A stretch of 64,000 nt of DNA from Mizuhopecten yessoensis (GCF_002113885.1 NW_018408919.1:1640987-1704986), one strand, 5' to 3'. Counted from the stretch's first letter, positions 11,376-54,592 are shown. Made by a program: numbers and translations. Notes: generated by a model from the sequence alone, not told the origin.

Positions 11376-14300
11376 TCACTGTTTGATTAAGCCTTCGGTA
11401 CTCAACAGTCGCACGATTTTCTGCAAAACCTCACACGAGGATCTGCTGTCGTCCGCCGTTGTACTTGTGTTGTCCTCGTCAGTGTCATCTATGATGCTTG
11501 TGAGAGACCTTGATCTTCTACAAAACCTTGGTACACTCTGTACAAGACCTTGATGAAATAAATCAAGCACAATTAAACAGATCCGATAAATTTATAATTC
11601 AACATAATCTAAATTTTCTTAAAAAAAAGCAGACAAAAAAAAAAACCAGTCAAGACCGCCTGTGCAAGGAGACAATTTATCAAAGTGTCGTTTTGCAGTT
11701 TTAACATAATCTGTAACAAGAGGCATAACCAGCAATAATTAAGAATTAAGCAAACTTATAGACTTTTGGAAATATATCTCTGAATATAGGTTTGAATGTA
11801 TGCACCTTTCACCCTAAATTTCCCTTTCTTCACATTATATTTCGTACTCTTGCCATAGGTCCGTCTTTTGTCCGACTCTTCATTTTTGTCTTTTTGAACA
11901 GAAGAGCCAGAAACAGTAATGATATTCCTAAGTAATTGTTGTTCTGGACACGTTAAATTTGCATCTTACGCTGTACGATTTTAGATCATTTAACATAAGT
12001 CAAACACATCAACTAAAGTGAACTCCATCTTAGTTTTCGATAATTAAACATTTATTGACTATCGTATTACTACCGTGTCAACATTTAGCTCAAACAGATG
12101 AAAAACTTCTTACCTTTTAATTGCATGGCAACATGGTCCTGTTCAGATTTCTTCAGGGCCACACAGAACTCCTCCAGTCCGTTCTTCCTGATGCAGAGAA
12201 TGTCGACAAGTCTGAGAATTCTTTGTATTCTTACTGGCGGAGCGACTATGTATTCACAAAGTCCCGGAGACAACACCAGCGTTGATACCAGGTGTGGTAA
12301 CACCAAGGGCACATCCATCATATTTTCACAAAGGTAATCCACATTACTTAATAGCTTCTCTGTTTCTTCTTGTGACAATGGTTCATCTTAAAGAAGATTA
12401 TAGACTTCATTGGTCGGTTTAAAAAAAATCTGGATCACAAAGTTGTATGTGTAATATTTGTATTTAATTACATTTTGTCAAACCTAAAATTTAATTTCAA
12501 AATGTTAGTTTCCGCAAGTGTTTTGCCTCCATCTGACTACAATATATTGCAATATTAATGCCTTCTGCAGGCTATATTCGAAGCTTTGTATGCTAAATGA
12601 CTTTCCAGTCTTGTATATTTTTCATACTTGTTCAGATTTGTTGTGTTAGCTCTATAGCTATATATATGGTTGTTCTCTTTCCAGATGACTATTACATATT
12701 TCTAGTTTTTTTGCTATCTTAAGACCAAATTCGAAGCGTTGTTAGGTAAATGAACTTGTTATTATATTTAACTGCATGTTACAAAATTTGTATAGTATCA
12801 TTTAAAATGAGAGAAAACATGTAAAATTTCAGAGGTTAGATAAATAGCATTTTGGAAAGGGTTATTCACGCTGTTGCGGCGAATCGCCCTAAAAGTAACT
12901 CGCGGATGATCTTATAATTGTTTCTAGCTATATGTACAAATACTTCACAGAGTCTATGCCATCTTTTGGACATTTCATGGGGGTAATATCTGTGCTATAC
13001 TAGGTAAATTCACTTTTTTTTAAATTTCATTTGAACTCTTTTTTATACAACACTAATACTACTCCAAATGTATTCTTTCTAAACCCACTTATTAGTCGTG
13101 TACGCTATAAATGAATAAAACGACATCTCACTTTTAATATACCGTCTGATGTAAAAAGCTTTTACTATTTGAAGGAAACACATATTGAGACGAGTTAAAT
13201 ATACGGGGGTACGCCTACATGTTTTGAAGATATCAGCTCTATTTTTAAATGCCATATGCCATTAAATCAAGATCAAACATAGTTTGATAAAAAAACAAAA
13301 ACGCAAAAACGTCAAGTGGATACCGATGTGTCGACAAAACTACAATTTGAACTAAAAATCAATTAAACGAGCAATAAAACAAAGCATGAACAAAGGGAAG
13401 ATTCACATGGAGACCCTCGAAAACATTTTTTCATCGCGTACGTTCTTTCAAACCATAATTTGCGCGATCCGATGAGTAAATAATGCTTCTGACAAGTGTG
13501 GGCCAATCATTGTTGTAACCGCCCACGTAAGTTATTCTTTAAAGATATTTCAGTGTCGGAATGTGTCACAATCGCTCTCTCACGTAAACCTACCGTTATG
13601 GTGCATCAAGCAATTTGGCCCTAGATATTAAATGAAGTTCGGTCAATGGTGAAACCGCCCACATTATCTTTAGTTAAAAAAAGGTTCCAATGTCAGATTT
13701 AACAACACAATCGCCCACGTATGCTTGTGGTTGTAAAATTACAGTCATACATTACGCATTCTTATTTATTGAAATGCGAGGACCAACCTCAATGTGTAGC
13801 ATGTCACGGACCATTTACAGTAAAGCATTTGTTACAGAATGCATCGACCTTCAGCCAACACGAGCAAAATTATAGGAATATAACAAATCACAAATCACTC
13901 TTCGAAACGGTAATTATCACAACAATTCTAACCTACCTGAAAACTGTTGGTCTGTTAAAAAAAAGATATAACTAACCATAGGCATTTGTTTCCAAGATGA
14001 CATTTGTCTTTTTTGTCTTTTTGTTTATTTGATGTGGTTTCTTTTTTATCTACCTTTCATTGGCCCTAAAGACCTCTTCTGCAGTTATGGGCCGTTAAGA
14101 ACTGTAGAATTCGACCTCTCTTTAAACAACGAAATTGAAACGGGACAAAACAAGAAAGAAAGTCTGTTGTTTACCCTTAATCAACAGTAAATATCCAACA
14201 CAATATGATAGAAAGACATACCAGGACCTTTAATCAAAAGAATTAATAAACCTTCACGATATGTCAACATCTTGTCTAGTTTCAAATAACAAAAGAAAAA

Positions 14301-17300
14301 GGGGTTCGATACATGCCCACTGCGCCTGTTTTTGGAGTATGAAAATGATAATGTATTGCAACCATACTATGCTCTCACTGAAACTAATCTGAAAAGCCAT
14401 CAGTGGACCTCTTGTGCAGATAGAAATTTTTAAAATGTTAAAAATGGAAAATGCTTCATAAGTAAATGTAATACGAGTATATATTCCAATTTAGACTTGA
14501 GAGTAGGCAAAACCGTATATTGTTTACCTTTAACTAGATTTTCGCCAAGAGAATGACACGCTCCTACGAAATCGCGGATGTTGACTGATTTGGAAACCCT
14601 CGCCCATTCCCAAATCACTTGTCGGAATCTTTCGTCCTCGTCATCTTGATCTTCTATAACTTCCAGTAGATCATCCGGTATCCCCAGGGCCGAGCCGAAT
14701 TGTCTGAATTTCACACCTGTTATTATTGAAATATGAACGTAACACACACAGGTGATTGCACCTTAAACAAATGGTAACGGATACAGTATACCAAAAATGA
14801 ATTACACTGGACCATACAGCTGACTCGTCCTGATGATGCTAGTGGTAAAACAAATCCGAATTCGTCTAAACTCAAACAGAAGGAAGGGTGAATACAACCC
14901 ATACATTTTATGATTTTCAAAAAGTAAAGGACACTGGTTAATTTCAAATTAAATCATTGGAAAAGAGTGCATATTATGAACCGTGCAACTTTACAAATGA
15001 TATTACTGTGGTAACGGTGTACCTCGAGGACTGGACAATCCACCAGCAGAGTCTACCAAGTTATATCTTGGAAAATGAGACACGCATGTAATTGAAATTA
15101 TGAGGCATTTCAGGAATGGACTTTAGATTGTTATACTATTGCTTTAACCAATTGAGTTACCTGCTCAACGGAAGTACGTGATATCTAGACAGAAGATAAG
15201 GGGAGGTTACTTGTATATACGAAAAACCACAGTACAGTTGGACAGGAATCCTTAAATGACATGGATATATATATATCCTTTTGTATCTGGAGGAGCCATT
15301 TAGTTTGAAAATTCGACGTTAAACATTCCCTAACAAATTCACGAACCATGTATCTCTTTAAATAAATACCAGAAGCACGAAGTAAGTAAGCACGAATGTG
15401 ACACTTTAGTTTGTCAATACAGAGAGCCAAACAAAGAAAATACTTTTACTACATCATTACGCCGTTATGTCTTTTAAGGACTCATCCACAGTGGTGTTTA
15501 TGTCTAACATGGTCCTTAACCTGTGTAGAAATACAGACAAATGTGTCTATTCCGTCTTTGCGTATTGCAGAGGTATTGATTGTTACGTCATTGGTTTGTG
15601 TGAGAAAATTACGTCGTTTTCTCAAAAATTGATGACGTTACTCTTACAAACAAATGACGTATCAATCAATACCTGCTCCCAAGAGAAGATAACTCTGCAA
15701 TACGCAAAGACGGAATAGCAATGAACCAATAACAGAGAAAGTGAACATGAATTAATACTAATTATCATATATTTCCTCGGCCAAATAAAGCGTCTTCATT
15801 TTTATTTTTTTAAATAACATTATAAACAGAACCGGAAACCTTTTTTCTGTATTTTTCCGCATGCGTAGTTGAGTTCAGCTGGGATATGGAATGCCATCAA
15901 CTCTTCATGTACTGCTTTGGGTCGTCCAGTTTTGTTTTGGTCGAGGAGTTTCTGTACACCAACGCTGATTTTCTCCACCATGATATCTGCATGGGTTTGT
16001 TTATGGAGACATTCGCCAATTAAACTCTTCATCTCTAATAATAGTTCGGAGATGTCACTGTCTTCTGCCTTATCACTTTCAAGTTTTTTCTCTAAAGTTT
16101 GTAATTTATCCTTCGTCTGTAAAAATAAATAAATGATTTAGCTATTTGGTACGAACATTCTATAATATTGTTATTCTTTGTCCATTTATAGGGACATTAA
16201 CAATCCCTGCCCCACTTCAGGCAAAACACTAGACAAGTCACGGTGCGTTTTTAAAAGTTAATTTCCCTTGATATTCGCACAAAGAACACAGTTCTGAGTT
16301 ATTTTGTGTTTATTTCATCTATATCTTTTTCATAAAAGTCCTGCGAGGTATTGTTTTTTTCTGATGATTGATTTATCAAAGCTATAGTCATGCTTAAAAT
16401 AAGTTTCAAATGTATCGCGAGTTGCAGTTATATTTACATTTTGATAGAGTTTAAATTGATGACGTCAGAATATAGATTGATGACGCTCAATGCATTGTAA
16501 TGGAAGGATGCAGAGCAAATGTTAACATAAAAACATAACTCTTAACGATATCAACTGTTAACTACATATGATATGAAACCGGAGTACCCGGAGAAAACCC
16601 ACGTATTCGGGCAGGTGACCCTATACCTTTTCACGTCCGATCGGGGAATCGAACCCCGGCCGCCTTGGTGAAAGACAACCGCTATATTATCTTACTTTCC
16701 ATTTGTAAACGTAACTTAAGTTTCCGTCGTTGAACCGTCGTTGAATCAAGATATGTATATAATCACCTGTAACATAATATCTGAGCATTTTTTTTCTATG
16801 ATTCCTTAAGACGTCTGTATGCGTGACTTGTCCATTTAACTATACCTTTTATTTATATTGTAAATCTACACAGACAAAATACAACTTACCAAAAAAATAT
16901 TATCCGTACTTCCTAGTACGACTTCCTAGCCTCACGAAACACGTACACTGATATACACGGTTTCTGAGCTTATTCTGGTAGTTGGAATGAGAGAAAAATA
17001 CTCTTTCTTGCCCAAAGGTGTAGGATAGTGAAATTTCAACCTCGGGTTATTCAAATTCGGCAAAACCCTCGGCAAAGTCTCGGGTTTTACAAAATCTGAA
17101 AAACCCTCGGGTGGAATTTCCCTATCCTACACCCCTGGGCATGAAAGAGTCTTATAATCCATATCTTCGTCTGAACAATGGATAGAAAGTATTAAGTTTC
17201 CGCGATGTAACCCTCGCACGTAAATACAAGCGATTAACAGGTGTGATTGTTTAGATTTATTTTAATTTAAAGCCAAATTCAATGAAACGTGCATAATTTA

Positions 17301-18367
17301 TTCAGAACGTAACAGAATCTGTATCAATACCTCAGTTGTACCGTATTTATTTAATAGTGTAAAACGTATGTGTTCCGGAAGTGCTCAAGGTGACACTCCC
17401 TCCGAATTGTTCGTAAGCAGGTAATCAGACATGTTTTGAGATGAAATAATTTGAGTGGGCTACCTAGAACAGAGAAGGGTGTACAGATGTGATTTCACTG
17501 CACCCCAGAACATTGAAGCATTTATACGATGTTTCTACTGTATAAATACTTCGTACACGTGTGTGTGGTACATGTACACAAACGAAGAATCTATACTTTG
17601 TAACTGTACCGTATATATATACTTCGTTTGTGTATCACACAAAAGTGAGCACAAACGTGTTATTTTGTACAGAAACAAAGTATGAATTCTTCAAATGTGC
17701 CTGGTCACCTACGGCCATCGTCGTAGATAATTCATAGAAATATCCATTTTCCTTTCTTATATTTGTCTTACTTTAAGGGTGGAGACTGAGGGATTCCCTA
17801 GTCAAATATTTTGTATAACGTCACGTCAATAATACAATGACGTCACGTCGATAGTGCATTGACGTCACGTTAACAATACATTGAATATGTAATGCAATAT
17901 TGAATGTATACGAAATGATCAATCAGGGTAAGAGGGAAAAAACCTCGGGGATTGATTCCCTTATCTCACCCCAAAGGGCAAAAGATTCTGATAATCTAGA
18001 CGTTTTAGAGAGGTCATATTACTGTACCACATACCTTACATAGGGATTGCTCGACTTTAATCTTCTCTCTGAACGCTTGTAGTTCATGATCCTCCATGCT
18101 CTCAATAGTTCGTTGAGTTCTCTTCTCCTTTTCGAAAATTTCCTTGCTCTTGTCCTTCGAATCTGGATAACTTCTTCGAAGAACTGGCTGTTTAAACCGA
18201 CCAGACTGAAGTGTTTCAACCGTTTGTTGAATAATGTCTTGTAAGTGATCACGGTCATTACTTAAATCGCCATTATCATCAGCAACACCTCGTATATGTT
18301 CCTTCAGGATACGGTATAGTTCTTTGAGAGTCTTCTTAGGGTCTTTACTTGATGAAAGTTCTGCCAT
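11376..18367 (-). CDS. Paralogue A: coiled-coil + Death domain + CARD protein, 414 aa, 5 coding exons
   Basis: Exons 18367-18035, 16116-15840, 14716-14528, 12386-12114 and 11548-11376. All introns are GT-AG with phases 0,1,1,1; total 1245 nt, open to TGA. DD: FRQFGSALGI...RFRQVIWEWAR...IRDFVGAC. CARD: LLSNVDYLCENM-DV..VLPHLV...RILRLVDIL...GLEEFCVAL...QDHVA..L. Confidence 0.9.
12114..12386 (-). CDS. Paralogue A CARD exon (phase 1-1)
   Basis: TAAG|ATGAA acceptor and AAAG|GTAAG donor; Apaf-1/RAIDD-like CARD pattern. Confidence 0.9.
13700..14102 (+). mobile_element. 3' remnant of an I-group (Nimb/I-like) LINE in intron 3 of A
   Basis: THSYLLKCEDQPQCVACHGPFTVKHLL matches the C-terminal CCHC zinc knuckle of I-group ORF2, followed by a TGGCCC...GGGCCGTTAA tail. 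Confidence 0.75.
14528..14716 (-). CDS. Paralogue A Death-domain exon (phase 1-1)
   Basis: ACAG|GTGTG acceptor and AAAG|GTAAAC donor; Death-domain pattern LG..LGI.....I....E...Q.I..W. Confidence 0.85.
16576..16675 (-). mobile_element. Truncated V-domain tRNA-SINE
   Basis: GAAACCGGAGTACCCGGAGAAAACCCAC (reverse complement of the V domain) and GGAATCGAACC (reverse complement of the B box). Confidence 0.8.
17000..17155. mobile_element. Palindromic (foldback) MITE
   Basis: GGTGTAGGATAG.GAAATT.CAACCTCGGG...CCTCGGCAAAGTCTCGGG...CCCTCGGGTGGAATTTCCCTATCCTACACC. Confidence 0.8.
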
Positions 18368-22285: not shown

Positions 22286-22287
22286 TG

Positions 22288-22328
<41 letters not shown>

Positions 22329-23780: not shown

Positions 23781-26700
23781 TTACACAATGCCTGGTTTCT
23801 TAAGCGACAATGCTATTTTCTGGAGAATGTGATAATCTGGCGCCATTACGTCTTCTGACATGGTACTTTGTGCGTCCTCTTCTCGCTCCTCGCCTACACC
23901 GGAAAATGAAGCTGAGCGTTTACCACACCCAGGCACAACTGAAGTTAAATTAAAACAAATCTTAATTTCATATTGATAATGAAGTAAACGTTGTTGACTC
24001 TATAGATATTTCATAATTAGAATAAAGTATATTTATTTCTGTTTCTTTGTGTCTAACAATTGATAAAATGAGTAATGCAAAGTTATATAGCAAACGTCAT
24101 TGACATCATAAGCAGATAACTAATATCTCGGGTATAAACACAAATATTTTCCCCGCTATGCAAACGTCTCGCACATATACAACCACGCAAACATACCTCC
24201 TTCAACCATGTTCTCGGCGACGTGAGCTTGGTCAGAAATTTTAAGGGCAGCACAAAATTCCTCGAATCCTGATTCTTTTGTACAAAGGACATCTACAAGT
24301 CGTAAAATCCTCTCTATTCTTCCAGACGGTGCCAGGACATACTCGGACAGTCGAGGAGATATCACAGATTTCGTCACCAGATGAGGGAGCACCAATGAAA
24401 CATCAAGCATGTTGTCGCACAGATATGCTACATTTTGAAGAAGTTTCTCCTTTTCTTTTGGTGCTAAAGGTTTGCCTGAATATAAGCAATACTGTAGCAG
24501 CAATACTATGAATTAATCTAGAAGTGATTACAACAATTGCGTTAAACTTTACGATAAGCTAACTATATCACTACCTTCATAACTGATGTGATAGGTTGGA
24601 CATATGGTACAGTTGCGTCTTTGATGGCATGGACGGAATAAATGAAGTGCACCAGTATTATCCCTTGGAATATGTGGGTAGGTTAATTAGCATCCACACA
24701 ATCAGAGATGCAACCAAATACAGAAATTCTGAATCAGAATTATATATGACAAATTGTCATTTGTAACAAAATGGACAGTAAATTATATAATTAATGATAA
24801 AGATTGTAACCATCAACTTATAACATGTAAGATAGCTAGTATCGATAGGGAGCAGCACTTAACACAAAAATACATTTGGGGTCAAATCTTGCGATTTAGG
24901 TAACGCCGCACAGTGACTGACATAGGTGTTGTTGAATTTTAGATAGTGCTATAGGGTCATCCATCTATGGCGGTCAGGTCCATCATGGATGACATAGATT
25001 TGGGAACGAGAGTGTGAACCCCCCAAACCAGACATGGGTAACTGTCTTTGCCATATGTCACATCTAGCATTGTTGTTTTGCTTGTTGTGTTACACGTTGA
25101 TGCTTCATTACATCATAGTTCACCAAGTTTTCTCTGTCCCTGGACAGGTGTCTCCACACTCTTCCCGGTGAGAGATATCCTTGTCTCACACTTGGGTTGA
25201 GACAGGGGGGTTCCCAAAATCATAGCAATTGCATGACGCCTGGACCGAATCTGAGAGTGCCTAATGAGGTATGCAGTTATATTCCACGGAATATAACAAT
25301 ACATCATCGTTATTTAACAAGGCTTAAATCAACCAAACGTTCATCAACGAGAACAGTCAAATGAATTATATATTGCCATAGAAGTTGTGATCAAAAATGT
25401 TTCTTCTTAATTAACCATAAAATGTTAAATTTCATCCACCAATGAATTATTTGTAATAATAATAACATGTAACATTTGATAAAGCGCCCTATCTAGTTAG
25501 AATAAGCTACTCTAAAGCGCTTTACAGTACAATGGTATACCATTTATACACTCAATGCAATTAGCATTTACATTAATCAATACAAGTTTGAGGAATTCGC
25601 AGGAACTGCTTTATCAGGGGCTTACTATTAGCTATATTCAACCTGGCTAATATTTCCCTATGTGTGTATGTCTTTATGTGTGTTAGAGTGGTATTGTGTT
25701 CTGTTTGAAGTGGGACCGTTTTCCAACAATATAATATATAGTGCCACCTCTCTTGAATGCTACAGCACAGATACCGCAACATCCATCTCAGACTATTTTA
25801 TACTCCACCTGGGTTGTTGGAGTTGTGTGGAACTTTCTTTGAATATTCCATGCGTGCGACGACTTCGGGGATCGAACCCCGGCCGCATGCGTAGAAGGCC
25901 GGAGTAATAAATACCCGACCAATCCGCCCATTTTGAATGGGAGTATACAAGATATGTTTTGACAAATCATAATTCAACATCACTCGTGCAATGAAATTTT
26001 AGCAAGAAATTTTGTTAAATTAACTAAATTGAGACTAGAGGAAAAACAGAAATGCAAAACCAATAAAATAAAAGCCAGTAGTTTGGGTGACATATATGAT
26101 GCAAAGTCAATAATAAAAGTCCGATACCTTTTCCCGTGTTTCCACTTGCTACATGACAAGCTCCCAAAAAGTCACGGATGTGCACAGCTTCGGGTTTCTT
26201 CGCCCATTCTCGGATCACCTGATGAAATTTCTCGTCTTCCTCATCGTCACCATAACGTTGGGTAATTGTATGAAGAACACTCTCCTCGATGTGCAATGCT
26301 CTACCCAACATATGGAAGCCCTTTCCTATCAATTTTCGTATAAACATCATGAAGCAAATTTCGATTTGTGACAAACTGTATCAAATTACCATTTCTTTTC
26401 ATTTAAAAAGAAATAAAAAGATTTTGTTTTTAATTGTAGACTTGTAGTTTAATTTAACTTATTCTTAATCAAATGTGGTCGAAAATGTTCCTAATGAGTC
26501 CAATCTGCTGTGAAGCATTAAACCTCAAAGTAGTCTAACTAAACCATTTGTCTTTCAACACTTTCTCATATGCCACAATCGATGCATCGTCATACTTTAT
26601 AAAGGCAAATTCACTGGACAAATGGTGGCAACATAACGAGATTTTACTCTATGATTTAACCAATGGTTCAGTAACATACATTTACATTTAAAGCATTGGT

Positions 26701-28323
26701 ATTTATCTCAAATAAATCAGTCAATAATAGTACATAAATCAATAAATATACAGATAACTTTTTACCTTGTGCTTGCATTTTAGTGCAGTAAAAATTCAGT
26801 TCTGCCGGAATTTGCACCTCTGAATGTTTGCCACGGGATACATTCTGTTGGTTTTGCAGTAGTTGCTACGTTATCCAATTTAATACACAAGAACACAACA
26901 TCAGCAGAAATAAAAGAACATGTTTTAAATATTCCTTACACAGGGGTATCTTTCTGAATCTTGGGTGCACTGGATAGGTCAACTGTGGGCCTCTTTATAA
27001 ACAATGTTTTTTCTATGATTCTAGTATTTCCCTTATCTATATTATTCAGTAATTTTTTATGAAACTTCATTATATATATAGCGTTTATAGTCTTTTTATA
27101 ATAACTATGACTGTTTCTATCTTTAAAGTAGTGAAATATCTATTTTACGAAGATCAACATGATACCAANAGCACTCTTTAAAAACGTAAATTAATAAATT
27201 ACAAATGAATAAAATAATGCGATAATTGTTTATGACATTGTCTTTGCTTCACTGTATCTGTTTGGTATGTATCACTGAAACGATCGTTTCTTCTTATGGA
27301 TTGACGAATTGAAAATAAACACTTAGCATTGCTTTAAAGTAGATATCAAATATCTGTGCGTGCTCTTTATAAAATGTATATCTTACCTGTATCCCAATAC
27401 TGATTTTCTCAACCTGTCCATCCGTATGAGTTTGTACCTGTCGACATTCATTTACAGACTTTCTCACCTCCAGGACGAGCTTCAGTAAAGTATTGTCACG
27501 TGATTTATCGGAATTAACCAAATATTTTTGTAGTTCTTGAAGTTTACCATTCACCTGAAAATAGTTTCCCTGCTAGTTGAATTGAATTCAATGGAAATAT
27601 GAATCATAACCTGTCAAAACATGCAAAATGATTACACATTAGTGACGTCGCTTAGGGAACAAAAATTAATCTGCTGCCCTCAATACAATACTTTGGATCT
27701 ATATCTTTTCTTTTCTCACTTGTACTCGTTTTGTTTTCGTGAATGTCTACCTAGACATCCGTCCTCGTATTCCTGGGTTGTTTCGAAGTCGTTAAACCCA
27801 AAACAAACAAACGAACAAACAAGCAAACAAACAAAAGCATCTATGAAGTGGTGATCTCTGATCTGTTAACCATTTGTTAACCATATACAATATGATAATA
27901 ATCTAGCAGAAATATCCTAAACAGCTAAAGTGCCTGAAACACTTATACGAGAACTGTCACAGTTCATTTCCCTCACAGACCTTCAGTTGATAAATGACGT
28001 ATATACAGTACCTTGGAAAGGTCATTCTCCGTTTTAGCCAGCCTCCTACTAATAGACAAATGGCGAGCTTCCAGAATTTGAATAACATCTTGGAGTTTGG
28101 AAACCTCTTCAGACCCAGGTTTATTACCAGCACTAAACGGTCTAGGAGGTCTTGTAGTAGCATTACTCGTCGAACTCAATTGTGTGAACCTTTTATGAAG
28201 TGAATCTTTCCTACGGTCATTCTCATTCATCACTTGGTCATTATCTCTAGTATAAGACAAAACACGATCTTTCAATAAATTATAAATTTCCTTAAGTGTC
28301 TGTTCCTCTCCACGTGCAGTCAT
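23781..28323 (-). CDS. Paralogue B: coiled-coil + Death domain + CARD protein, 404 aa, 6 coding exons
   Basis: Exons 28323-28012, 27554-27387, 26865-26766, 26325-26128, 24475-24197 and 23938-23781. GT-AG, phases 0,0,1,1,1; total 1215 nt to TAA. An acceptor at 28345 implies an upstream non-coding exon. Confidence 0.92.
24197..24475 (-). CDS. Paralogue B CARD exon
   Basis: LLQNVAYLCDNMLDV..VLPHLV...RIERILRLVDVL...GFEEFCAAL..SDQAHVAE; TTCAG|GC acceptor and GGAG|GTATGT donor. Confidence 0.92.
25470..25905 (-). mobile_element. Meta-domain-like tRNA-SINE in intron 4 of B (matching copy in D at 49245-49685)
   Basis: B box (reverse complement GGGATCGAACC), Meta-like core ATAGTGCCACCTC.CTTGAATGCTACAGCACAGATACC, and an L2-like tail (reverse complement of TGTAAAGCGCTTTAGAG). 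Confidence 0.65.
26128..26325 (-). CDS. Paralogue B Death-domain exon
   Basis: GKGFHMLGRALHIEESVLHTI...DEKFHQVIREWAK...IRDFLGAC; GATAG|GA acceptor and AAG|GTATC donor. Confidence 0.87.
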
Positions 28324-28569
28324 TTGTATGTCGGTTTAGCGTACCTGTCAACAAGAGTAGCTTTAAGTTATACATAGTGTATAGTTTACAAACATACCTT
28401 GTTTTAGGTTCAACAAGATGCATAAAAGATGGAATAGTATGCTTAAATGTTAACCCCATGATGAGTTTTATTTTTCAAAAATATATTAAACATCTATCTC
28501 TGTTGATATTAATAAACTTAATATACACAGCTATCACAATGATACATACATAAATAAATAAAAATAAAT

Positions 28570-35000: not shown

Positions 35001-36316
35001 GGACCTAGTTTCGGAGTCACAGCTTGGAAACAGATAAGATCCCCACCCTATAACCATATATACAATTGCTGAGTATAAAGAGATGGATGCACATACGCGT
35101 CCAGGATGGCCTCGGGATCTGCCCCACCCTTGGAGAATCAATTCCTGGGTCGAAACTTCGAAACGGTTAAGATCCCCACCCGAAAACTATATATACAAGT
35201 GTTGGGCATAAAGAGACGAATGCAGTCATGATATTAGAATTGACCCCAGGGTCTGCCCTATCCTTGCAGACTTAACCCCTGGGTCACAACTTTGAAGCGG
35301 TTGAGATCGCACCCCCAAAACTATATATACAAATGCTTGGCATAAAGAGACGAATGCAGTCATGAAATTAGAATTGATCCTGGGGTCTGGGCACAACCCT
35401 AGGGACCAGGTTTCTGAGTCACAGGTTGGAAACAGTTGAGAACCCCATCCCAAAACCATACATAAAATTGCCGGTCATGAAAAATCTAATACAGATATGC
35501 TACAAGGATTGGCCTTGGGGTCTGGCCTATTCCCTTGGATCTCATTTGGAGAATATTTTGCCATGATTGCTGAGATATCCAGGTGAGCGATACAGGCCCT
35601 CTGGGCATCTTGTTTTATTATGATATTAAAATATTTTTACTTTGACAGCTTCTATTATTAGCCTCACTTGTTATTACTATCCCTTATTATTTGTTTTCGT
35701 GGAATACTAGAATGGGGCTGGTTTTAATTGAAAAAAATAAATTATTTTGGTGTTTCCAGTCAGTATAATTTTGTACTGTGACGAAATAAACAACGTCAGA
35801 GAGTTTGATTGTAATTTGTCAATTTGTCGTTAAATATAACTCGTTCAGCAGTATGCTATAAGATTCGTTTTGAAAATAATACTGATGCGAAAAATATTAC
35901 TGTAAAACATTTTGTTCCTTTAATTTCGAACGTTTTTATCCTCTGACATTTTGACAACTGCGTTCATTTTACTACAAAGCTACATTCAAATGCAATAACA
36001 ATACCTTAGTAAGCACAGTCTCTGTTTTTGCCTGCTCCCTACTTATTGACAAATGGCGACTTTCCATAATTTTAATGACACGCTTCACTTTTGCATCTTC
36101 TTCTGACATTTGTATACTATCAGCACTTCTTGGTCTGGGAATGTCACTAGAATCACTACTCGTCGACCTCAATTTTCTGGCCGTTTTCTTTAGTGTATCT
36201 TTAATGCGGTCGTTTTCATTTACTACACGTTCTTTATCTCTGGTTAGAGACAAAACACGATCCTTCAACAAATAATAAATTTCCTTGAGTGTCTGTTCCT
36301 CTCCACGTCCCGTCAT
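32028..36316 (-). CDS. Paralogue C: coiled-coil + Death domain + CARD protein, 409 aa, 6 coding exons
   Basis: Exons 36316-36005, 34468-34292, 34041-33942, 33366-33169, 32824-32546 and 32191-32028. GT-AG, phases 0,0,1,1,1; total 1230 nt to TAA. An acceptor at 36335 implies a 5' UTR exon. Confidence 0.92.
32546..32824 (-). CDS. Paralogue C CARD exon
   Basis: Near-identical to the B and D CARD exons; canonical splice sites. Confidence 0.92.
33169..33366 (-). CDS. Paralogue C Death-domain exon
   Basis: GTDFHKLGRALNIEESVLGTI...EKFQQVIREWAK...IRDFVGAC. Confidence 0.87.
34584..35614 (+). mobile_element. HINE/CvA-like element in the first coding intron of C
   Basis: TTTTTATCTCACCTG start, internal diverged repeats, CAGGTGAGCGATACAGGCCCTCTGGGCATCTTGTT end. 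Confidence 0.75.
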
Positions 36317-47255: not shown

Positions 47256-50200
47256 TTACACAATGCCTCGTTTCTTAAGCAACAATACTATTTTCTGGAG
47301 AATGTCATAATCTGGCGCCATTACGTCTTCTGACATGGTACTTTGTGCGTCCTCTTCTCGCTCCTCGCCTACACCGGAAAATGAAGCTGGGCGTTTACCA
47401 CACCCAGGCACAACTGAAGTTAAATTAAAACAAATCTTAATTTCATATTGATAATGAAGTAAACGTTGTTGACTCTATAGATATTTCATAGTTAGAATAA
47501 AGTATTTTTATTTCCCGTTCTTTGTGTCTAACAATTGATAAAATGATTAATGCAAAGTTATATAGCAAACGTCTTTGACATCATAAGCTGATAACTAATT
47601 TCTCGGGTATAAACAAAAATATGTTCCCCGCTATGCAAACATCTCGCACATATACAACCACGCAAACATACCTCCTTCAACCATGTTCTCGGCGACGTGA
47701 GCTTGGTCAGAAATTTTAAGGGCAACATAAAATTCCTCAAATCCAGATTCTTTTGTACAAAGCACATCTACAAGTCGTAAAATCCTCTCTATTCTTCCAG
47801 ACGGTGCCAAGACATACTCGGACAGTCGAGGAGATATCACAGATTTCGTCACCAGATGAGGGAGCACCAATGGAACATCAAGCATATTGTCGCACAGATA
47901 TGATACATTTTGAAGAAGTTTCTCCTTTTCTTTTGGTACTAAAGGTTTGCCTGAATATAAGCAATACTGTAGCAGCAATACTATGAATTATGCGAGAGGT
48001 GATTACAACAATTGCGTTACGATAAGCTAACTATATCACTACCTTCATAACTGATGTGATAGGTTGGACATATGGTATAGTTGAGTCCTTGATGGCATGG
48101 ACGGAATACACCAGTATTATCCATTGGAATATGTGCGTAGGTTAATTAGCATCCACACCATCAGAGATGCAACCAAATACAGAAATTCTGAATCAGAATT
48201 ATATATGACAAATTGACATTTGTAACAAAATGGGCTGTAAATTATATAATTAATGATAAAGATTGTTACCATCATCTTATAACATGTAAGATAGCTGGTA
48301 TCGATAGGGAGCAGCACTTAACACAAAAGTACATTTGGGGTCAAATCTTAAGATTTGGGTAACACCGTGCATTGATTGACGGGGGTACTGTTGAATTGTA
48401 GATAGTGCTTTAGGGCTATATCCATCTAGTGGCGGCCAGGTCAGTAATGGATCACACACCAGCCAGGGGTAACTGTGTTTGCCATATGTCACATCTAGCA
48501 TTGTTGTTTTGGTTGGGGAAAAGATTAGAAGTTAACTTAAATTGCTGCACGAACCTCATTTCGTATGTACAGTAGGTGGTACATAATCATGAATGGTTAA
48601 TAGTGTATAGATTGTTAAAAGTACTTGGGGAGAATTCCACAGGAAATCTTAAACTGAGAGACGGGATGCGGGGTTCGGGATTGTGAGCTACTGGAGAGAG
48701 ACCAGAGAAGGCCTCGGCTGGAGGTGCCTGGGATGGCTCGGGTACAACACTTGGTGTGCCTTAGAACTACATGTATGTGTTTGATGTTGTATCGCTATAT
48801 AATCTTGTGCAGGTAGATTTGCTGTCGTGTTCCAGAAGCATGTTGTTCAGCTTGTTGTGTTACACGTTGATGCTTCATTACATCATAGTTCACCAAGTTT
48901 TCTCTGTCCCTGGACAGGTGTCTCCACACTTTTCCCGGTGAGAGATATCCTTGTCTCACACTTGGGTTTAGACAGGGGGGTTCCCAAAATCATAACCATT
49001 GCACGACGCCTGGACCGAATCTGAGAGTGCCTAATGAGGTATGCAGTTATATTCTAAGGAATATAACAATATATCATCGTTATTTAACAAGGCTTAAATC
49101 AACCAAACGTTCATCAACGAGAACAGTCAAATGAATTATATATTGCCATAGAAGTTGTGATCAAAAATGTTTCTTCTTAATTAACCATAAAGATGTTAAA
49201 TTTAATCCACCAATGAATTATTTTGAATAATAATAATATGCAACATTTGAGAAAGCGCCCTATCTAGCAAGAATAAGCCACTCTAAATCGCTTTACAGTA
49301 CAAAGGTATACCATTTATATGCAATCAATGGATTTACATTAATCAATAAAAGTTTGAGGACTTTGCAGGTGATGCCTTATCAGGCGCTTACTATTAGCCA
49401 TATTCAACATGGCTAATATCTTCCTATGTGTGTATGCCTGTATGTGTGCTATAGTGGTATTGTGTTCTGTTTGTAGTGGGACCGTGTTCCAACGGTATAA
49501 TTTATAGTGCCACCTCTCTTGAATGCTACAGCACAGATACCGCAGCATCCACCCCAGACTATTTTATACTCCACCTGGGTTGTTGGAGTTGTGTGGGCAG
49601 GAGAAAAACACTTTCTCTGAATATTCCATGCGTACAACGACTTCGGGGATCGAACCCCGGCCGCCTGCGTGGAAGGCCGGAGTGTTAAATACTTGACCAA
49701 TCCGCCCATTTTCAATGGGAGTATATAAAATATTTTTTGACAAAATCGTAATTCAACATCACTCGTGCAATGAAATTTTAGCAAGTAAATTAACTAAATT
49801 GAGACTAGAGGAAAAACAGAAATGCAAAACCAGACTTCCAATAACATAAAAGCCAGAAGTTTTGATGACATATATGGTGTAAAGTCAATAATAAAAGTCC
49901 GATACCTTTTCCCGTGTTTCCACTTGCTATATGACAAGCTTCCAAAAAGTCCCGGATGTGCACAGCTTCGGGTTTCTTCGCCCATTCTCGGATCACCTGT
50001 TGAAATTTCTCGTCTTCCTCATCGTCACCATAACGTTGGGTAATTGTCTGAAGTACGTTCTCCTCGATGTTCAAGGTTCTACCCAACATTTGGAAGTCTT
50101 TTCCTATTAATTTTCGTATAAACATCATAAAGCAAATTTCGATTTGTGACAAACTGTAGCAAATTACCATTTTTTGTCATTTAAAAAGAAATAAAAAGAA

Positions 50201-53200
50201 TTTTGTTTTTAATTGTAGACTTGTAGTTTAATTAAACTTATTCATTGACAAATTTGGTCGAAAATGTTCCTAATGGGTCCAATCTGCTGTTAAGAATTAT
50301 ACCTCAAAGTAGTCTAACTAAACCATTTGTCTTTCAACACTTCCTCATACGCCACAATTGATGTATCGTCATACTTTATAAAGGCAAATTCACTGGACAA
50401 ATGGTGGCAACATAACGAGATTTTACTCTATGATTTAACCGATGGTTCAGTAACATGCATGTACAAACAAGAGGATCGTGGGCTTTAACGGTCACCTGAG
50501 TGCTAAACCGGATGTTATCGATGTTGCCAAATGAAAAAGAAATCATTTTGTAACAAAGGTAACTTGAACTACCTGTAATGCAAAAGTAGTGTGAAAGATC
50601 TGGGTAGTATATGTACTATGTACAAATAGTGGTTCTGTCTGTCAGCTGAATTATGTTAAAGCAACTTAAGACCCTTCCATCTATAAGTAAAGTTAACCTC
50701 CTCCCCAGGGGGAAACGTGAGACCAAAGGGTCAACAAATTCACAATTTTGGTGAAGCACATTAAGACCCGTTTATCTATGAAGAGTATTTGATTCTACCA
50801 TATCTGGATCTTGTGAAGAAGATTTTTGAAATTTTAGTCAGTTTAACTCTTTTTTGCCCCGCCCCTCAGGCTCCTTGGGGCTGGGGACCATATAATTCAC
50901 AATTAAACTATAAGTAAAGTTAACCTCCTCCCCAGGGGGAAACGTGAGACCAAAGGGTCATCAAATTCACAATTTTGGTGAAGCACATTAAGACCCGTTT
51001 ATCTATGAAGAGTATTTGATTCTACCATATCTGGGTCTTGAGAAGAAGATTTTTGAAATTTCAGTAAATTCAACCCGTTTTGGCCCCACCCATTAGCCCC
51101 TGGGGGTCAGTCAGGGCTGATATAAACTATAGTAAAGTTTACCTCCTCCCCAGGGGGAAACGTGATACCCCAGGGTCTTGAAATTCACAATTTTGTAAAA
51201 ACACCTTAAGACCCTTCCATTTATGAAGAGTATTTGATTCTACCATATCTGGGTCTTGAGAAGAAGATTTTTGAAATTTCAGTAAATTCAACCCTTTTTG
51301 GCCCCACCCATCAGCCCCTGGGGGTCAATCAGGGCTGATATAAACCATAGTAAAGTTTAACTCCTCCCCAGGGGGAAACGTGATACCCCAGTGTCATGAA
51401 ATTCACAATTTTGGAAAAACACCTTAAGACCCTTCCATTTATGAAGAGTATTTGATTCTACCATATCTGGATCTTGAGAAGAAGATTTTTGAAATTTTAG
51501 TCAATTTGACACCCTCCTCAGGACCCTGGGGGCTGGGGACCATTTAATTCACTGTATTTATGGACCTTTGGCCATGGAAGGTTTCTGCAAAATTTCATTG
51601 AAATTGGTTCAGGTACTTTGGAGAAAATGTCGAAAATGTAAATTGTTTAAGGACGCACGACGCACGACGCACGACGCCGGAAAAAGTTCGATCACGATAG
51701 ATCACTTGAGACTTTGTCTCAGGTGACCTAATAAAATGCATCTAAGTCATTGGTATTTATCTCAAATAAATCAGTCAATAATAGTACATATATCAATAAA
51801 TATACAGATAACTTTTTACCTTGTGCTTGTATTTTAGTGCAGTAAAAATTCAGTTCTGCTGGAATTTGTACCTCTGAAAGATTGCCACGGGATACATTCT
51901 GTTGGTTTTGCAGTAGTTGCTACCATATCCAATATAATACACAAGAATACAGCATCAGCAGAAATAAAGGAACATGTTTAAAATATTCCTTACACAAGGG
52001 TATCTATGAGAATCGTGGGTGTTCTGGATAGGCCCCTTTATAAACAATGTTTTCTCTATGATTCTAGTACTTTTCTTATCTATATTATTCAGTAAATTTT
52101 CATAAAATTTCACTATATACATGTATATACTGTTTTTTTGTAACAACTATGACTGTTTCTATCTTAGTGAAATATTTAATTTACGAAAATCAACATGGAG
52201 CAAAACAAACTTTAAAAAAGTAAATAAATAAAATATAAATGAATACAAGTATTAGCTTTCCAAAAACTAAGAGGGCTACCAACAGCATTATTTATTAGTA
52301 AGCAGTTATAGTACAGTGTGAGATAGATGGGTATGTAGAAGCTGGCGTAGTTATACTGATAATTTATTTAAAATATATATATAGGATTATTCCTCAAGGC
52401 CTGTACAAACCCTGTTACATAATATATACATGTGATTTCGTGTAAATGCCCTAACAGGGGCATCCATATCCAATAAGAAAGTGATAACATGAGTAGCATG
52501 CAACCAATGACTAGTACTACTTAAAATATTAGAATCAATGACAATTACAACGCAGGTCACACTTATACCAGATCCGGATTGTCAGGACCAGCATGTATTT
52601 TTTGGTATTTTTTAAAGTTATTGTGCAAGTTAGAAAAATTGTTATATAATTTAAAAGAACATATAAATACTTATACATAAATAAGAAAATTGAAAAAAAA
52701 AATTGGTTTAGTGACCCAGATCCTGCCAGGACCAAAACAGTCATTACTTAAACAAGGACAGGGAAAACCGGGACCAAATATTTATTTTAATTATAATTAA
52801 CTCAATTTTAAAGCTTATTTTATGTTGTTATTTCATGTAGGAAATACAAGAACACCATACTTAATGTTTAAATAAAATAAAAAAGATATGTTTCAAATAC
52901 TGTTTTTACTTGTTATTACGGCTTTTGTGATTTTGCTTTTTTACTAAAACCAGGTCTGGTAATGTCGTATGTTGGGTATGTTTTGGATTCCTGTTTCAAA
53001 TCATAATGCAATGCATATTTTTTTATACAAACTTGTGCTAAAATACATTTTTATTCAGGTCATATCAATTCATTAAGGTAGTTGCATTTAAAAACAAGAA
53101 AGAAACACATTAAAGCACTTGGTCCTGGTTTTCCGTCTAGTTCTGGTATTAGTATGAACCTGAAATGGCACAATTCGGAGCTCTCTGATTTTATCAATTC

Positions 53201-54592
53201 CCGACCATAACTTAACAACATCGCCGCCGTGCGTGGAATAGCAGAACAATGTCTTACAATCCTGTATGAACATGCGCATCTATCTGGCTTTATCCATCAC
53301 ATTTTGTTTGCAATTAATTTCCCCACTTGTACCTCTACGAATGGTGACATCACAGACAGCAGGTAACCAATCACTGCGTGTAAAGTATGTTATAATATAT
53401 GTTATATTTTCTTTGCTTCATCGTATCTTTTTGAAATGTTTGGCTGAAACGATCGTTTCTTCTTAAGAATTGACGAGAAAAATGAACACTTAGCATTGCT
53501 TGAAAGTGGATATCTTATTGCATCTGTGTGTGCTCTTAATAAAAATGTATATCTTACCTGAATCCCAACGCTGATTTTCTCAACCTGTCCGTCCGTATGA
53601 GTTTGTACCTGTCGGCATTCATTTACAGACGATCTCACCTCCAGGAGGAGCTCCAGTACAGTGTTGTCACGTGATTTATCGGAGTCAAGTATACCAACCA
53701 AACCTTTCTCTAGTTGTTGAAGTTTATCATTCACCTGGAAATATGTTTGATTGCTAGTTGAGTTGAATTCATTAGAATCATAAAACAGTCCTGTTTCGTT
53801 TGCCTATCGCAACGTGAACAATGTACATGTAACCACAGGTTTCGCGTCAAATATACAAAATTACTAAACATCAATGACGTCCTATTGTCTTTTTGTCGTA
53901 CGAGACGACTTATATGGGATCCTCTGCAGCATCGGGGATTTTTCGGTGTCTTCAACTTAAGGGACATCAAAGAGACCAAAATCGATCTGTTAACCACATT
54001 GCCACTTTGGATCTATTTTTTCCCTATTTCACTTGTCTACATTTTATTTTCGTTACTGTATACCTAGACATCCATAATCATATTTCCTTGGATGTTTCGA
54101 AGTCGTTAAACCCAAAATAAACAAACAAACAAGTAAAGAAACGAAAGAATCTATGAATTGGTGATCTCTGATCTGTTAACCATACAATATAATAATAATA
54201 ATAATAATCTAGCAGAAATCTCCTAAGCAGTTTAAGTGCCTGAAACACGTATGAGACAACTGCCACAGTTCATACAGTACCTTGGAAAGGTCAGTCTCCG
54301 TTTTAGCCAGCCTCCTACTAATTGACAAATGGCGAGCTTCCAGAATTTTGTTTACATCTTGGAGTTTGGAAATTTCTTCAGGCCCAGGTTTATTACCGGC
54401 AATAAACGGTCTAGGAGGTCCAGTAGTAGCATTTCCCATCGAACTCAATTGTCTGACCGTTGTTTGAAGTGTGTCTTTCATACGGTCGTTTGCATTCATC
54501 ATTTGGTTACTATCTTTAGTATAAGACAAAACACGATCCTTTAATAAATTATAAATTTCCTTAAGTGTTTGTTCCTCTCCACGTGCCGTCAT
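47256..54592 (-). CDS. Paralogue D: coiled-coil + Death domain + CARD protein, 407 aa, 6 coding exons
   Basis: Exons 54592-54281, 53734-53558, 51919-51820, 50103-49906, 47950-47672 and 47413-47256. GT-AG, phases 0,0,1,1,1; total 1224 nt to TAA. Introns and flanks align with B. Confidence 0.92.
47672..47950 (-). CDS. Paralogue D CARD exon
   Basis: 5 aa differences from the B CARD exon by my alignment; canonical splice sites. Confidence 0.92.
49245..49685 (-). mobile_element. Meta-domain-like SINE in intron 4 of D
   Basis: Same position and sequence as 25470-25905 in B. Confidence 0.65.
49906..50103 (-). CDS. Paralogue D Death-domain exon
   Basis: GKDFQMLGRTLNIEENVLQTI...EKFQQVIREWAK...IRDFLEAC. 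Confidence 0.87.
50466..51731 (-). mobile_element. HINE inserted in intron 3 of D (absent in B)
   Basis: Reverse complement of the 6068 family ends (CACTTGAGACTTTGTCTCAGGTGACCT; AACAAGAGG), (GACGCAC)n microsatellite and ~220-230-bp internal repeats. The B intron is uninterrupted at ~26680. Confidence 0.85.

What the first reader, a model, noticed from the sequence alone, without database searches (positions are those of the whole stretch)
11376..54592. Tandem cluster of four intact coiled-coil - Death domain - CARD genes (reverse-RAIDD adaptors): candidate lineage-specific death-fold signalling system
Seen: four complete minus-strand genes with conserved exon phases, encoding 404-414 aa proteins with ~160-190 aa of heptad-rich helix, a DD, a CARD and a short tail, and no catalytic, NACHT, TIR or LRR domain. 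Established: RAIDD/CRADD is CARD-then-DD with no coiled coil; ASC and FADD pair other death folds; CARD9/CARMA have an N-terminal CARD then a coiled coil. I do not recognise a characterised CC-DD-CARD family. Inference: oligomerising adaptors that bridge DD partners (PIDD, RIPK, MyD88/IRAK, death receptors) to CARD caspases or CARD sensors, expanded locally as bivalve immune genes often are.
Basis: partly seen in the sequence, partly recalled or inferred. Interest (0 to 1): 0.9.

Follow-up and report, generated by a model that had tools for sequence, protein, structure and literature searches.

The report
Scallop coiled-coil, death-domain, CARD gene cluster
Four neighbouring, transcribed genes of the Yesso scallop encode enzyme-free proteins with a helical head, a death domain and then a CARD, an uncharacterised arrangement that also occurs in mussels, an oyster and a brachiopod and probably relays immune or cell-death signals.

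Summary
Window 11376-54592 carries four intact minus-strand paralogues of 414, 404, 409 and 407 aa with GT-AG introns in phases 0,0,1,1,1. Gene A lacks intron 2.

- **Public models:** three of my models are letter-identical to Mizuhopecten yessoensis proteins annotated as uncharacterized. The fourth gene is annotated only in truncated form.
- **Transcription:** all five introns of gene B are spliced as modelled in transcript-like contigs of two runs from two studies. Letters specific to paralogue D, and two matching only C, appear there too.
- **Domains:** the family profile hits the FADD death domain (E 3.6e-8). The modelled CARD matches the APAF-1 CARD (Z 15.4). No other domain is present.
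- **Helical head:** three predicted long helices, with only about 40-55 residues of clear heptads. Self-association was not shown.
- **Copy number:** the genome holds only these four copies. They form one clade, sister to Mytilus proteins.
- **Wider module:** the contiguous DD-CARD module also occurs in an oyster, a pearl oyster and Lingula (after a long coiled coil). It follows TIR in two proteins (one Mytilus, one unassigned) and precedes a kinase in Haliotis.

The family is therefore lophotrochozoan with a local scallop expansion, and it is not scallop-specific. I found no characterisation in the literature. The adaptor function is inferred and was not tested.

The parts
11376..18367 (-). 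Gene A (LOC110440319), CDS span, 414 aa, five coding exons: 18035-18367, 15840-16116, 14528-14716, 12114-12386, 11376-11548
   Evidence: Model is identical to P0002 (XP_021338982.1 / OWF37298.1). It is 44-46% identical to B-D. dS against B-D is saturated.
23781..28323 (-). Gene B (LOC110440365), CDS span, 404 aa, six coding exons: 28012-28323, 27387-27554, 26766-26865, 26128-26325, 24197-24475, 23781-23938
   Evidence: Identical to P0001. All five introns are spliced out in contigs of X1, and four of the five in X2. Depth lies on the exons. An X1 contig reaches 28346 and carries 311 further letters not on the stretch, so there is probably an upstream non-coding exon.
32028..36316 (-). Gene C (LOC110440387), CDS span, 409 aa, six coding exons: 36005-36316, 34292-34468, 33942-34041, 33169-33366, 32546-32824, 32028-32191
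   Evidence: Identical to P0090. The donor of intron 4 is GTCATG. Two letters that match only C among the paralogues compared at those places are seen in contigs laid on B's CARD exon.
47256..54592 (-). Gene D, CDS span, 407 aa in my model, six coding exons: 54281-54592, 53558-53734, 51820-51919, 49906-50103, 47672-47950, 47256-47413
   Evidence: Publicly annotated only as a 295-aa product (P0091, KP79_PYT12677) that reads into intron 4. X2 contigs spliced across introns 4 and 5 carry D's letters at 24250-24288, 26163 and 26174. This supports the full-length model. D is 87% identical to B.
12114..12386 (-). CARD exon of gene A
   Evidence: Pfam CARD 21.9 bits. Aligned in A1.
24197..24475 (-). 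CARD exon of gene B (residues about 261-352)
   Evidence: Pfam CARD 26.3 bits, above the cut-off of 23.9. AlphaFold residues 265-351 have pLDDT 77-90. APAF-1 CARD 4rhw_E matches at Z 15.4, rmsd 2.3, 92 residues aligned, with Foldseek TM 0.87-0.90.
32546..32824 (-). CARD exon of gene C
   Evidence: Pfam CARD 24.8 bits. DNA is 94% identical to the CARD exons of B and D while exon 1 is 75% identical. dS is 0.15-0.17 here against 0.24-0.57 in exons 1, 3, 4 and 6, which points to gene conversion.
47672..47950 (-). CARD exon of gene D
   Evidence: Pfam CARD 22.3 bits. dN/dS is 0.16-0.30 in this exon among B, C and D.
14528..14716 (-). Main death-domain exon of gene A (the domain starts in the preceding exon)
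   Evidence: Pfam Death 17.5-18.1 bits, below the cut-off. It is covered by the family profile that hits the FADD DD.
26128..26325 (-). Main death-domain exon of gene B (domain residues about 177-258, starting in exon 26766-26865)
   Evidence: Profile A2 positions 189-281 match FADD DD 1e3y_A at E 3.6e-8 and RIPK1 DD at E 1.1e-4. AlphaFold residues 181-254 have pLDDT 80-90. RIPK1 DD 9kv7_A matches at Z 8.3, rmsd 2.3, 77 residues aligned.
33169..33366 (-). Main death-domain exon of gene C
   Evidence: Pfam Death 13.2 bits. Homologous to B's exon 4.
49906..50103 (-). Main death-domain exon of gene D
   Evidence: Pfam Death 19.5 bits. A search of the species' own genome finds only four such exons.
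54281..54592 (-). First coding exon of gene D (N-terminal helices). Counterparts: A 18035-18367, B 28012-28323, C 36005-36316
   Evidence: No Pfam family. Only four copies in the genome. Predicted helices 3-51 and 71-118 flank a disordered proline-rich linker. A conserved N-terminal motif is shared with Mytilus proteins.

Best explanation
These are four functional, tandemly duplicated genes of Mizuhopecten yessoensis. They encode non-enzymatic death-fold scaffold proteins.

**Anatomy.** An N-terminal region of about 175 aa forms three long helices. A FADD/RIPK1-like death domain follows, joined by a short conserved linker to an APAF-1-like CARD. After that come a disordered acidic and serine-rich tail and a final amphipathic helix.

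**Most likely role.** They act as signal-relay adaptors in innate-immune or cell-death pathways. The death domain would dock on an activated death-domain protein (a receptor, sensor or adaptor). The CARD would then recruit a CARD effector such as a CARD caspase, or a BCL10-, MAVS- or RIPK2-type protein. The helical head would supply self-association or recruitment.

**What is shown:** gene structure, transcription and splicing, domain identities, purifying selection, the local expansion, and the wider distribution of the DD-CARD module, including its fusions to TIR and to a kinase.

**What is inferred:** every binding step, oligomerisation, and the pathway.
For: **Genes and splicing**
- The models have open frames and GT-AG introns.
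- A, B and C are identical to public proteins.
- All five introns of B are spliced in X1 and four of the five in X2, two runs from two studies. Depth is confined to exons.
- Letters specific to D, and two matching only C, appear in those contigs.

**Domains**
- Pfam CARD hits on all four CARD exons.
- CARD and Death are each found in 12 of 16 family members.
- The family profile hits the FADD DD at E 3.6e-8, the RIPK1 DD at 1.1e-4 and the APAF-1 CARD at 0.025.
- The AlphaFold model has confident DD and CARD regions. The APAF-1 CARD matches at Z 15.4 and the RIPK1 DD at Z 8.3. Foldseek ranks the APAF-1 CARD first.
- No other domain is present.

**Constraint**
- dN/dS is about 0.47 overall and 0.16-0.30 in the CARD exon.

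**Signalling context from relatives**
- The same contiguous DD-CARD module follows a TIR domain in P0026 and P0052 and precedes a protein kinase in Haliotis P0048.
- In the module tree, the clade that holds the TIR-linked forms (it also holds members without a detected TIR) is sister to the clade of the scallop genes and their nearest Mytilus relatives.

**Possible partners**
- The scallop has at least 57 other CARD-coding stretches.
Against: - No binding, oligomerisation or induction was tested.
- The homodimer prediction for residues 1-175 gave no verdict.
- Two raw RNA-seq runs showed no reads on the exons.
- The runs that do hold the spliced form are RNA only by the tool's guess.
- The tissue and condition of expression are unknown.
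- The heptad signal is modest, and the arrangement of the N-terminal helices is uncertain (pTM 0.31).
- Similarity of the DD to FADD and of the CARD to APAF-1 does not identify partners.
- A death-fold protein without an enzyme domain can equally be an inhibitor.
Confidence: 0.6

Rival explanations
1. They are negative regulators (decoys). Lacking any effector domain, they would sequester death-domain or CARD partners and damp signalling, as CARD-only proteins and ARC do in vertebrates.
For: No enzymatic domain is present. Four slightly different copies could tune several pathways. The CARD exon is kept nearly identical among B, C and D by constraint or conversion, as expected if all must fit one common CARD target.
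Against: Two different death folds in one chain is the hallmark of bridging adaptors. Relatives place the module between a TIR domain and downstream elements, or in front of a kinase, which are positive-relay contexts. Nothing here distinguishes the direction of the effect.
Confidence: 0.15
2. They are self-contained activation platforms for CARD caspases. The helical head and death domain would drive self-assembly, and the APAF-1-like CARD would bring CARD caspases into proximity, substituting for an apoptosome in a lineage reported to lack APAF-1.
For: The closest structural matches of the CARD are the apoptosome CARDs: APAF-1 at Z 15.4, CED-4 at Z 13.9 and Dark at Z 11.9-12.1. [quoted passage not shown] The module occurs in molluscs and a brachiopod.
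Against: Differences in fold similarity among CARDs are small. RIG-I CARD scores Z 14.4. Self-assembly is not shown. The TIR and kinase fusions point to receptor-proximal signalling. The genome has four weak NB-ARC matches that I did not resolve, so I did not verify the loss of APAF-1 myself.
Confidence: 0.12
3. They serve a non-signalling or unrelated role, for example a structural coiled-coil protein in which the death folds act only as generic interaction or folding units.
For: The N-terminal region has no recognisable family. The expression context is unknown.
Against: Both death folds are the best-conserved parts of the protein. The module is shared with TIR and kinase proteins.
Confidence: 0.08
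4. Some or all copies are decaying duplicates or annotation artefacts without function.
For: Gene D is publicly annotated only as a truncated product. dN/dS of 0.47 is not strong constraint. There were no reads in two raw RNA runs.
Against: All four frames are intact over 404-414 codons, although A diverged from B-D beyond dS saturation. Splicing of B is confirmed and D-type spliced contigs are seen. dN/dS is below 1 in every region. There are no fragments or extra copies in the window or the genome.
Confidence: 0.05

Closest known systems
Uncharacterised bivalve and brachiopod proteins with the same layout. Examples: Mytilus galloprovincialis LOC143043310 (P0095, 483 aa), M. coruscus CAC5355864.1 (P0006), M. 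edulis CAG2205606.1 (P0038), Saccostrea cucullata LOC134238984 (P0074) and Lingula anatina 'major antigen' XP_013388917.1 (P0069).
   Same: They share a contiguous DD-CARD module of about 176 aa that aligns end to end (hhalign E 1.7e-20 to 1.6e-16). A helical or coiled-coil region precedes it. Mytilus and the scallop share N-terminal and C-terminal short motifs. The scallop clade is sister to the Mytilus 483/399 group.
   Different: They are only 20-27% identical overall. The N-terminal regions differ in length and in insertions. None of them is characterised, so they give a family but no function.
CRADD/RAIDD (CARD then DD, about 200 aa)
   Same: It has the same two death-fold domains and no enzymatic domain, and it is a bridging adaptor (DD to PIDD, CARD to caspase-2).
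   Different: The domain order is reversed. CRADD has no 175-aa helical head and no tail. The death domain here is closest by profile to FADD and RIPK1, with the PIDD DD only at E 0.06 and the RAIDD DD not listed. The RAIDD CARD ranks well below the APAF-1 CARD (Z 9.9 against 15.4). Bivalves have their own CRADD orthologue (PMC11463336).
FADD (DED then DD)
   Same: It is the best sequence match of the death domain among solved structures (E 3.6e-8 over the whole domain). It is an adaptor built from two death folds.
   Different: There is no DED here. The second fold is a CARD and lies C-terminal to the DD. A helical head is present.
CARD9 / CARMA (CARD-CC) proteins
   Same: They combine a CARD with a coiled coil, and their signalling works through regulated oligomerisation.
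   Different: In CARD-CC proteins the CARD is N-terminal and packs on the coiled coil, and there is no death domain. Here the order is helices, DD, CARD. The CARD9 CARD matches at Z 10.8-11.4.
TIR-DD-CARD proteins (P0026, 505 aa, a transcript contig of an unnamed organism; Mytilus trossulus LOC134687233, P0052) and the Haliotis asinina DD-CARD-kinase (P0048)
   Same: They carry the same DD-CARD module.
   Different: The N-terminal helical region is replaced by a TIR domain, or a kinase is appended. They are also uncharacterised.

Membership tests
Death-fold (DD superfamily) adaptor proteins | A recognisable death domain (six-helix bundle, Pfam PF00531 type) | tested here: met
   The family profile hits the FADD DD at E 3.6e-8 and the RIPK1 DD at 1.1e-4. 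Pfam Death is found in 12 of 16 family members. AlphaFold residues 181-254 have pLDDT 80-90, and the RIPK1 DD matches at Z 8.3. On the scallop proteins alone, Pfam Death is below its cut-off.
Death-fold (DD superfamily) adaptor proteins | A recognisable CARD (PF00619) | tested here: met
   Pfam scores 21.9-26.3 bits, and two of the four exons are over the cut-off. The APAF-1 CARD matches at Z 15.4, rmsd 2.3, 92 residues aligned, with Foldseek TM 0.87-0.90.
Death-fold (DD superfamily) adaptor proteins | No catalytic or sensor domain | tested here: met
   Pfam finds only CARD and Death on the exons and on the full proteins.
Death-fold (DD superfamily) adaptor proteins | Homotypic binding to a DD partner and to a CARD partner | not testable with these tools
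   No partner pair was tested.
CRADD/RAIDD | N-terminal CARD followed by a C-terminal death domain in a protein of about 200 aa | tested here: not met
   The order is DD (about 177-258) then CARD (about 263-352), after a 175-aa helical region.
CRADD/RAIDD | Orthology to CRADD | tested here: not met
   The nearest relatives of the CARD among 1.84 billion representatives are DD-CARD-order proteins of bivalves. The RAIDD CARD scores Z 9.9 against 15.4 for APAF-1. The RAIDD DD is not among the profile hits at E up to 1.
CARD-CC (CARD9/CARMA) | N-terminal CARD directly followed by a coiled coil | tested here: not met
   The CARD is near the C-terminus, the helices are N-terminal, and a death domain lies between them.
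FADD | A death effector domain N-terminal to the death domain | tested here: not met
   There is no DED hit in Pfam. The region before the DD is three long helices.
Unnamed lophotrochozoan DD-CARD-module family | A contiguous DD-CARD module of about 176 aa that aligns end to end | tested here: met
hhalign gives E 1.7e-20, 6.9e-18 and 1.6e-16 to Saccostrea, Pinctada and Lingula.
Unnamed lophotrochozoan DD-CARD-module family | CC-type subgroup: helical head with a conserved N-terminal motif and a C-terminal amphipathic motif | tested here: met
   Alignment A2 shows both motifs in the scallop and in Mytilus/Logan proteins. The scallop clade is sister to Mytilus 483/399 and Logan 494 with support 97/94.

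The most novel reading that the evidence does not exclude
The helices-DD-CARD proteins are a missing link of lophotrochozoan innate immunity. One possibility is that they are the activation platform for CARD caspases in animals reported to lack APAF-1. The other is that they are the bridge that lets death-domain-bearing sensors, such as the DD-type RIG-I-like receptors of this scallop, talk to CARD effectors. In either case the four scallop copies would diversify the input side while gene conversion keeps one common CARD output.
Probability: 0.15. Interest if true: 0.8.

Novelty: new variant of a known kind. Interest (0 to 1): 0.5.

Why it matters
Death-fold adaptors determine which sensors can reach which caspases or kinases. 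A recent survey of lophotrochozoan apoptosis (PMC11463336) treats CRADD as the only CARD-bearing activator in molluscs and finds no APAF-1.

A second, conserved family that joins a FADD/RIPK1-like death domain to an APAF-1-like CARD would add a route that current pathway maps of bivalves lack. Bivalves are aquaculture species that suffer mass mortalities from infection.

The same module appears after a TIR domain and in front of a kinase. That gives concrete, testable hypotheses about where it sits. The scallop cluster offers four natural variants whose input halves have diverged while the CARD exon is kept nearly identical among three of them.

Domain shuffling of death folds in invertebrates is well known, so this extends a known theme and does not overturn anything.

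Tried and rejected
**Self-association.** I sent residues 1-175 of P0001 as two copies to complex prediction. Two attempts did not complete. The third gave 'no answer' with score 0.08. This is no evidence either way.

**Word-indexed homologue searches.** They returned only 3-7 proteins and missed even paralogue A. Their blanks for other taxa mean nothing. The taxonomic breadth comes from the exhaustive representative search together with name look-ups.

**N-terminal region.** Pfam, the ESM Atlas and Foldseek on a separate model gave only generic helical matches.

**Rfam on the whole window.** Nothing was found.

**Raw RNA runs X21 and X22.** There were no reads on the exons. Sampling was about 19% of each run and the tissue is unknown, so this is not evidence of silence.

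**Paper searches.**
- Strings such as DD-CARD or Death-CARD found nothing relevant.
- 'DD-CARD' in PMC7053062 means a CARD-type death fold.
- The amphioxus domain-shuffling paper does not list this order.

**Extra or broken copies.** None is present in the window or in the genome.

**CRADD orthology.** Rejected on domain order and on nearest relatives.

**APAF-1 absence.** My own check found four weak NB-ARC matches. I did not resolve them, so I rely on the paper only as a citation.

**Handling of spliced models.** They were not sent to search or fold tools as typed text. A, B and C were used through public protein ids that proved identical. The joined model of D was used only inside my own scripts (lengths, identities, dN/dS, tree), and its search was done exon by exon by reference. 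The joined-D search step was left out.
Full report
**What is in the sequence.**

The window has 35-39% G+C over the region. Minus-strand open frames recur four times between 11 and 55 kb. I compared stop-to-stop frames between the four units and read the splice sites. From these I built four models.

| Gene | CDS span | Length | Coding exons |
|---|---|---|---|
| A | 11376-18367 | 414 aa | 5 |
| B | 23781-28323 | 404 aa | 6 |
| C | 32028-36316 | 409 aa | 6 |
| D | 47256-54592 | 407 aa | 6 |

All introns are GT..AG and the phases are 0,0,1,1,1. In A the intron between exons 2 and 3 of the others is absent.

A tblastn of the models against the window finds no further exon remnants. Searches of the species' own 988-Mb assembly with exon 1, the death-domain exon and the CARD exon each find only these four copies.

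**Identity and public annotation.**

An exhaustive profile search with the four CARD exons returned two top clusters of 404 and 414 aa. Models A, B and C are letter-identical to P0002, P0001 and P0090. These are Mizuhopecten yessoensis LOC110440319, LOC110440365 and LOC110440387, all named 'uncharacterized protein' or 'Death domain-containing protein'.

Gene D is public only as a 295-aa product, P0091, which reads through the donor of intron 4.

The joined model of D was used only in my own scripts and was not sent to any search or fold tool.

**Transcription.**

Contigs of two runs from two studies (X1 and X2, which the tool guesses to be RNA) were laid on 23300-29299. X1 skips all five modelled introns of B: 258, 1652, 440, 521 and 457 bases, with CT..AC ends on the plus strand. 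X2 skips four of them and lacks the 521-base joint. Depth lies on the exons and is near zero in the introns.

One X1 contig ends its match at 28346 and carries 311 further letters. This implies an upstream non-coding exon.

The other letters seen in these contigs match paralogue D at most places:
- all five at 23775-23831;
- all five at 24250-24288, on an X2 contig spliced across intron 5;
- both at 26163 and 26174, on an X2 contig spliced across intron 4.

Two places match only C among the paralogues compared there. So D, and probably C, are transcribed too, and D is spliced beyond exon 4 as in my model. Alleles of B cannot be strictly excluded.

Two raw RNA-seq runs had no reads on the exons.

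**Domains.**

- **CARD by sequence.** Pfam CARD scores 21.9-26.3 bits on the CARD exons, against a cut-off of 23.9.
- **Death domain by sequence.** Pfam Death scores 13-19.5 bits on the partial death-domain exons, below the 22.6 cut-off. The domain is split over two exons.
- **Family profile.** A profile of eight full-length family members hits the FADD death domain over its whole length at E 3.6e-8. It hits the RIPK1 DD at 1.1e-4, the APAF-1 CARD at 0.025 and the PIDD DD at 0.06.
- **Family members.** CARD and Death are each detected in 12 of 16 members.
- **AlphaFold model of P0001.**

| Residues | Feature | pLDDT |
|---|---|---|
| 3-50, 71-118, 125-170 | helices | 34-83 |
| 181-254 | death domain | 80-90 |
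| 265-351 | CARD | 77-90 |
| 353-385 | disordered tail | below 50 |
| 386-398 | final helix | about 69 |

- **Structure comparison.**
  - The CARD aligns best to the APAF-1 CARD: Z 15.4, rmsd 2.3, 92 residues, with Foldseek TM 0.87-0.90.
  - Other CARD matches are RIG-I at Z 14.4, CED-4 at Z 13.9 and RAIDD CARD at Z 9.9.
  - The death domain aligns to the RIPK1 DD at Z 8.3.
- **N-terminal region.**
  - It has no family in Pfam, the Atlas or the PDB.
  - A crude heptad score of my own exceeds 95% of shuffles over about 40-55 residues around 85-125. In C it also does so over about 16-55.
  - 'Coiled coil' is therefore plausible but only partly shown. A homodimer prediction gave no verdict.

**Evolution of the cluster.**

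B and D are a segmental duplicate that is alignable through introns and flanks at 74-91%.

Protein identities are 87% for B-D, 75-76% for C against B and D, and 44-46% for A against the rest.

dN/dS is about 0.47 overall and 0.16-0.30 in the CARD exon. dS to A is saturated.

The pattern is a mosaic:
- The CARD exon of C is 94% identical in DNA to those of B and D, with dS 0.15-0.17. Exon 1 is 75% identical, with dS 0.57.
- Exon 2 of C is nearly identical to that of D, with dS 0.05.

This points to gene conversion on top of constraint.

In a maximum-likelihood tree of the DD-CARD module, A+(C+(B+D)) is one clade with support 96/94. It is sister, with support 97/94, to Mytilus proteins and a transcript from an unnamed run. 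The four copies therefore arose in the scallop lineage after the split from mussels.

**Relatives.**

Only 89 representative clusters match this CARD at E up to 0.001.

- **Same layout: short N-terminal motif, helices, DD, CARD, tail.** Found in Mytilus coruscus, M. galloprovincialis, M. trossulus, M. edulis and M. californianus.
- **Same contiguous DD-CARD module.**
  - Saccostrea cucullata (E 1.7e-20).
  - Pinctada imbricata (E 6.9e-18).
  - The brachiopod Lingula anatina (E 1.6e-16), where a strong coiled coil of about 190 residues precedes it.
- **Other contexts of the module.**
  - It follows a TIR domain in P0026 and P0052.
  - It precedes a protein kinase in Haliotis asinina P0048.
  - It occurs twice in P0014.

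The family is thus lophotrochozoan, with several N-terminal or C-terminal partners for one signalling cassette.

**How it most likely works.**

*Shown:* an enzyme-free protein with two different death folds in tandem, under purifying selection and transcribed. The module is reused with TIR and with a kinase.

*Inferred from established knowledge of death-fold signalling* (homotypic DD-DD and CARD-CARD assembly, as in FADD, RAIDD and MyD88 complexes): the death domain is recruited to an activated DD protein and the CARD nucleates or recruits a CARD effector. The helical head adds avidity or localisation.

[quoted passage not shown] Candidate outputs are among at least 57 other CARD-coding stretches in the genome.

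Notes from the scan report CARD-DD (CRADD-like) tandem clusters elsewhere in this genome. I did not check them.

The rivals are a decoy role, a self-contained caspase-activation platform, a non-signalling role, and decay. None is excluded except decay, which is unlikely.

**Comparison and novelty.**

This is not CRADD (reversed order, extra head, different nearest relatives), not FADD (no DED) and not CARD-CC (CARD not N-terminal, a DD is present).

I found no paper that describes this architecture. PMC11463336 states that molluscs have a single CARD-bearing activator, CRADD.

The genes themselves are already in public databases as uncharacterised proteins. Shuffling of death folds in invertebrates is a known theme. 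I therefore rate this a new variant of a known kind, of moderate interest.

Noticed in passing
window 1-2149: A 64-bp satellite of 33.6 copies with 92% matches and a strong G-over-C skew (0.43).
   Followed up: partly
window 3681-4601 and 57378-58382: Two further tandem arrays: a 44-bp unit in 21 copies and a 35-bp unit in 29 copies.
   Followed up: no
window 40017-41697 versus 44060-46143; 43398-44060 versus 46501-47149 and 23312-23674: Duplicated blocks lie between genes C and D, including 145-bp tandem arrays at 40993-41393 and 45006-45839. There is also an extra copy of the 3' flank shared by B and D, with no exon attached. These look like traces of unequal crossing-over in the cluster.
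   Followed up: partly
window 25455-25815, 28557-28899, 49226-49581: An interspersed repeat (about 76% identity between copies) sits in intron 4 of B and of D and upstream of B. It has very high depth in the transcript-like contigs (up to about 3,000) and carries the only raw RNA reads on the stretch. It is probably an expressed repeat family. Rfam finds nothing here.
   Followed up: partly
window 47256-54592 (gene D): The public model (P0091, 295 aa) reads through the exon-4 donor into the intron. Spliced contigs carrying D's letters support a 407-aa product.
   Followed up: yes
window 24187-24497, 32536-32846, 47662-47972; 34292-34468 versus 53558-53734: Similarity among paralogues is a mosaic. 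The CARD exon is 94% identical among B, C and D, and exon 2 of C is nearly identical to that of D, while the other exons of C are much more diverged. This suggests gene conversion.
   Followed up: yes
proteins P0026, P0052 (TIR-DD-CARD), P0048 (Haliotis, DD-CARD-kinase), P0014 (two DD-CARD modules): The same DD-CARD module is fused to TIR, to a protein kinase, or duplicated in other lophotrochozoan proteins. All of these are uncharacterised.
   Followed up: partly
G000:C962:270446-297232: Three NB-ARC-like matches (28-39 bits) lie within 27 kb on another contig of the same genome. This could be a tandem cluster of NB-ARC genes and bears on the reported loss of APAF-1.
   Followed up: no
window 34847-35389 and 50681-51506: Tandem arrays of 134 bp lie in intron 1 of gene C, and arrays of 218 bp lie in intron 3 of gene D. 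They account for part of the intron size differences between the paralogues.
   Followed up: no
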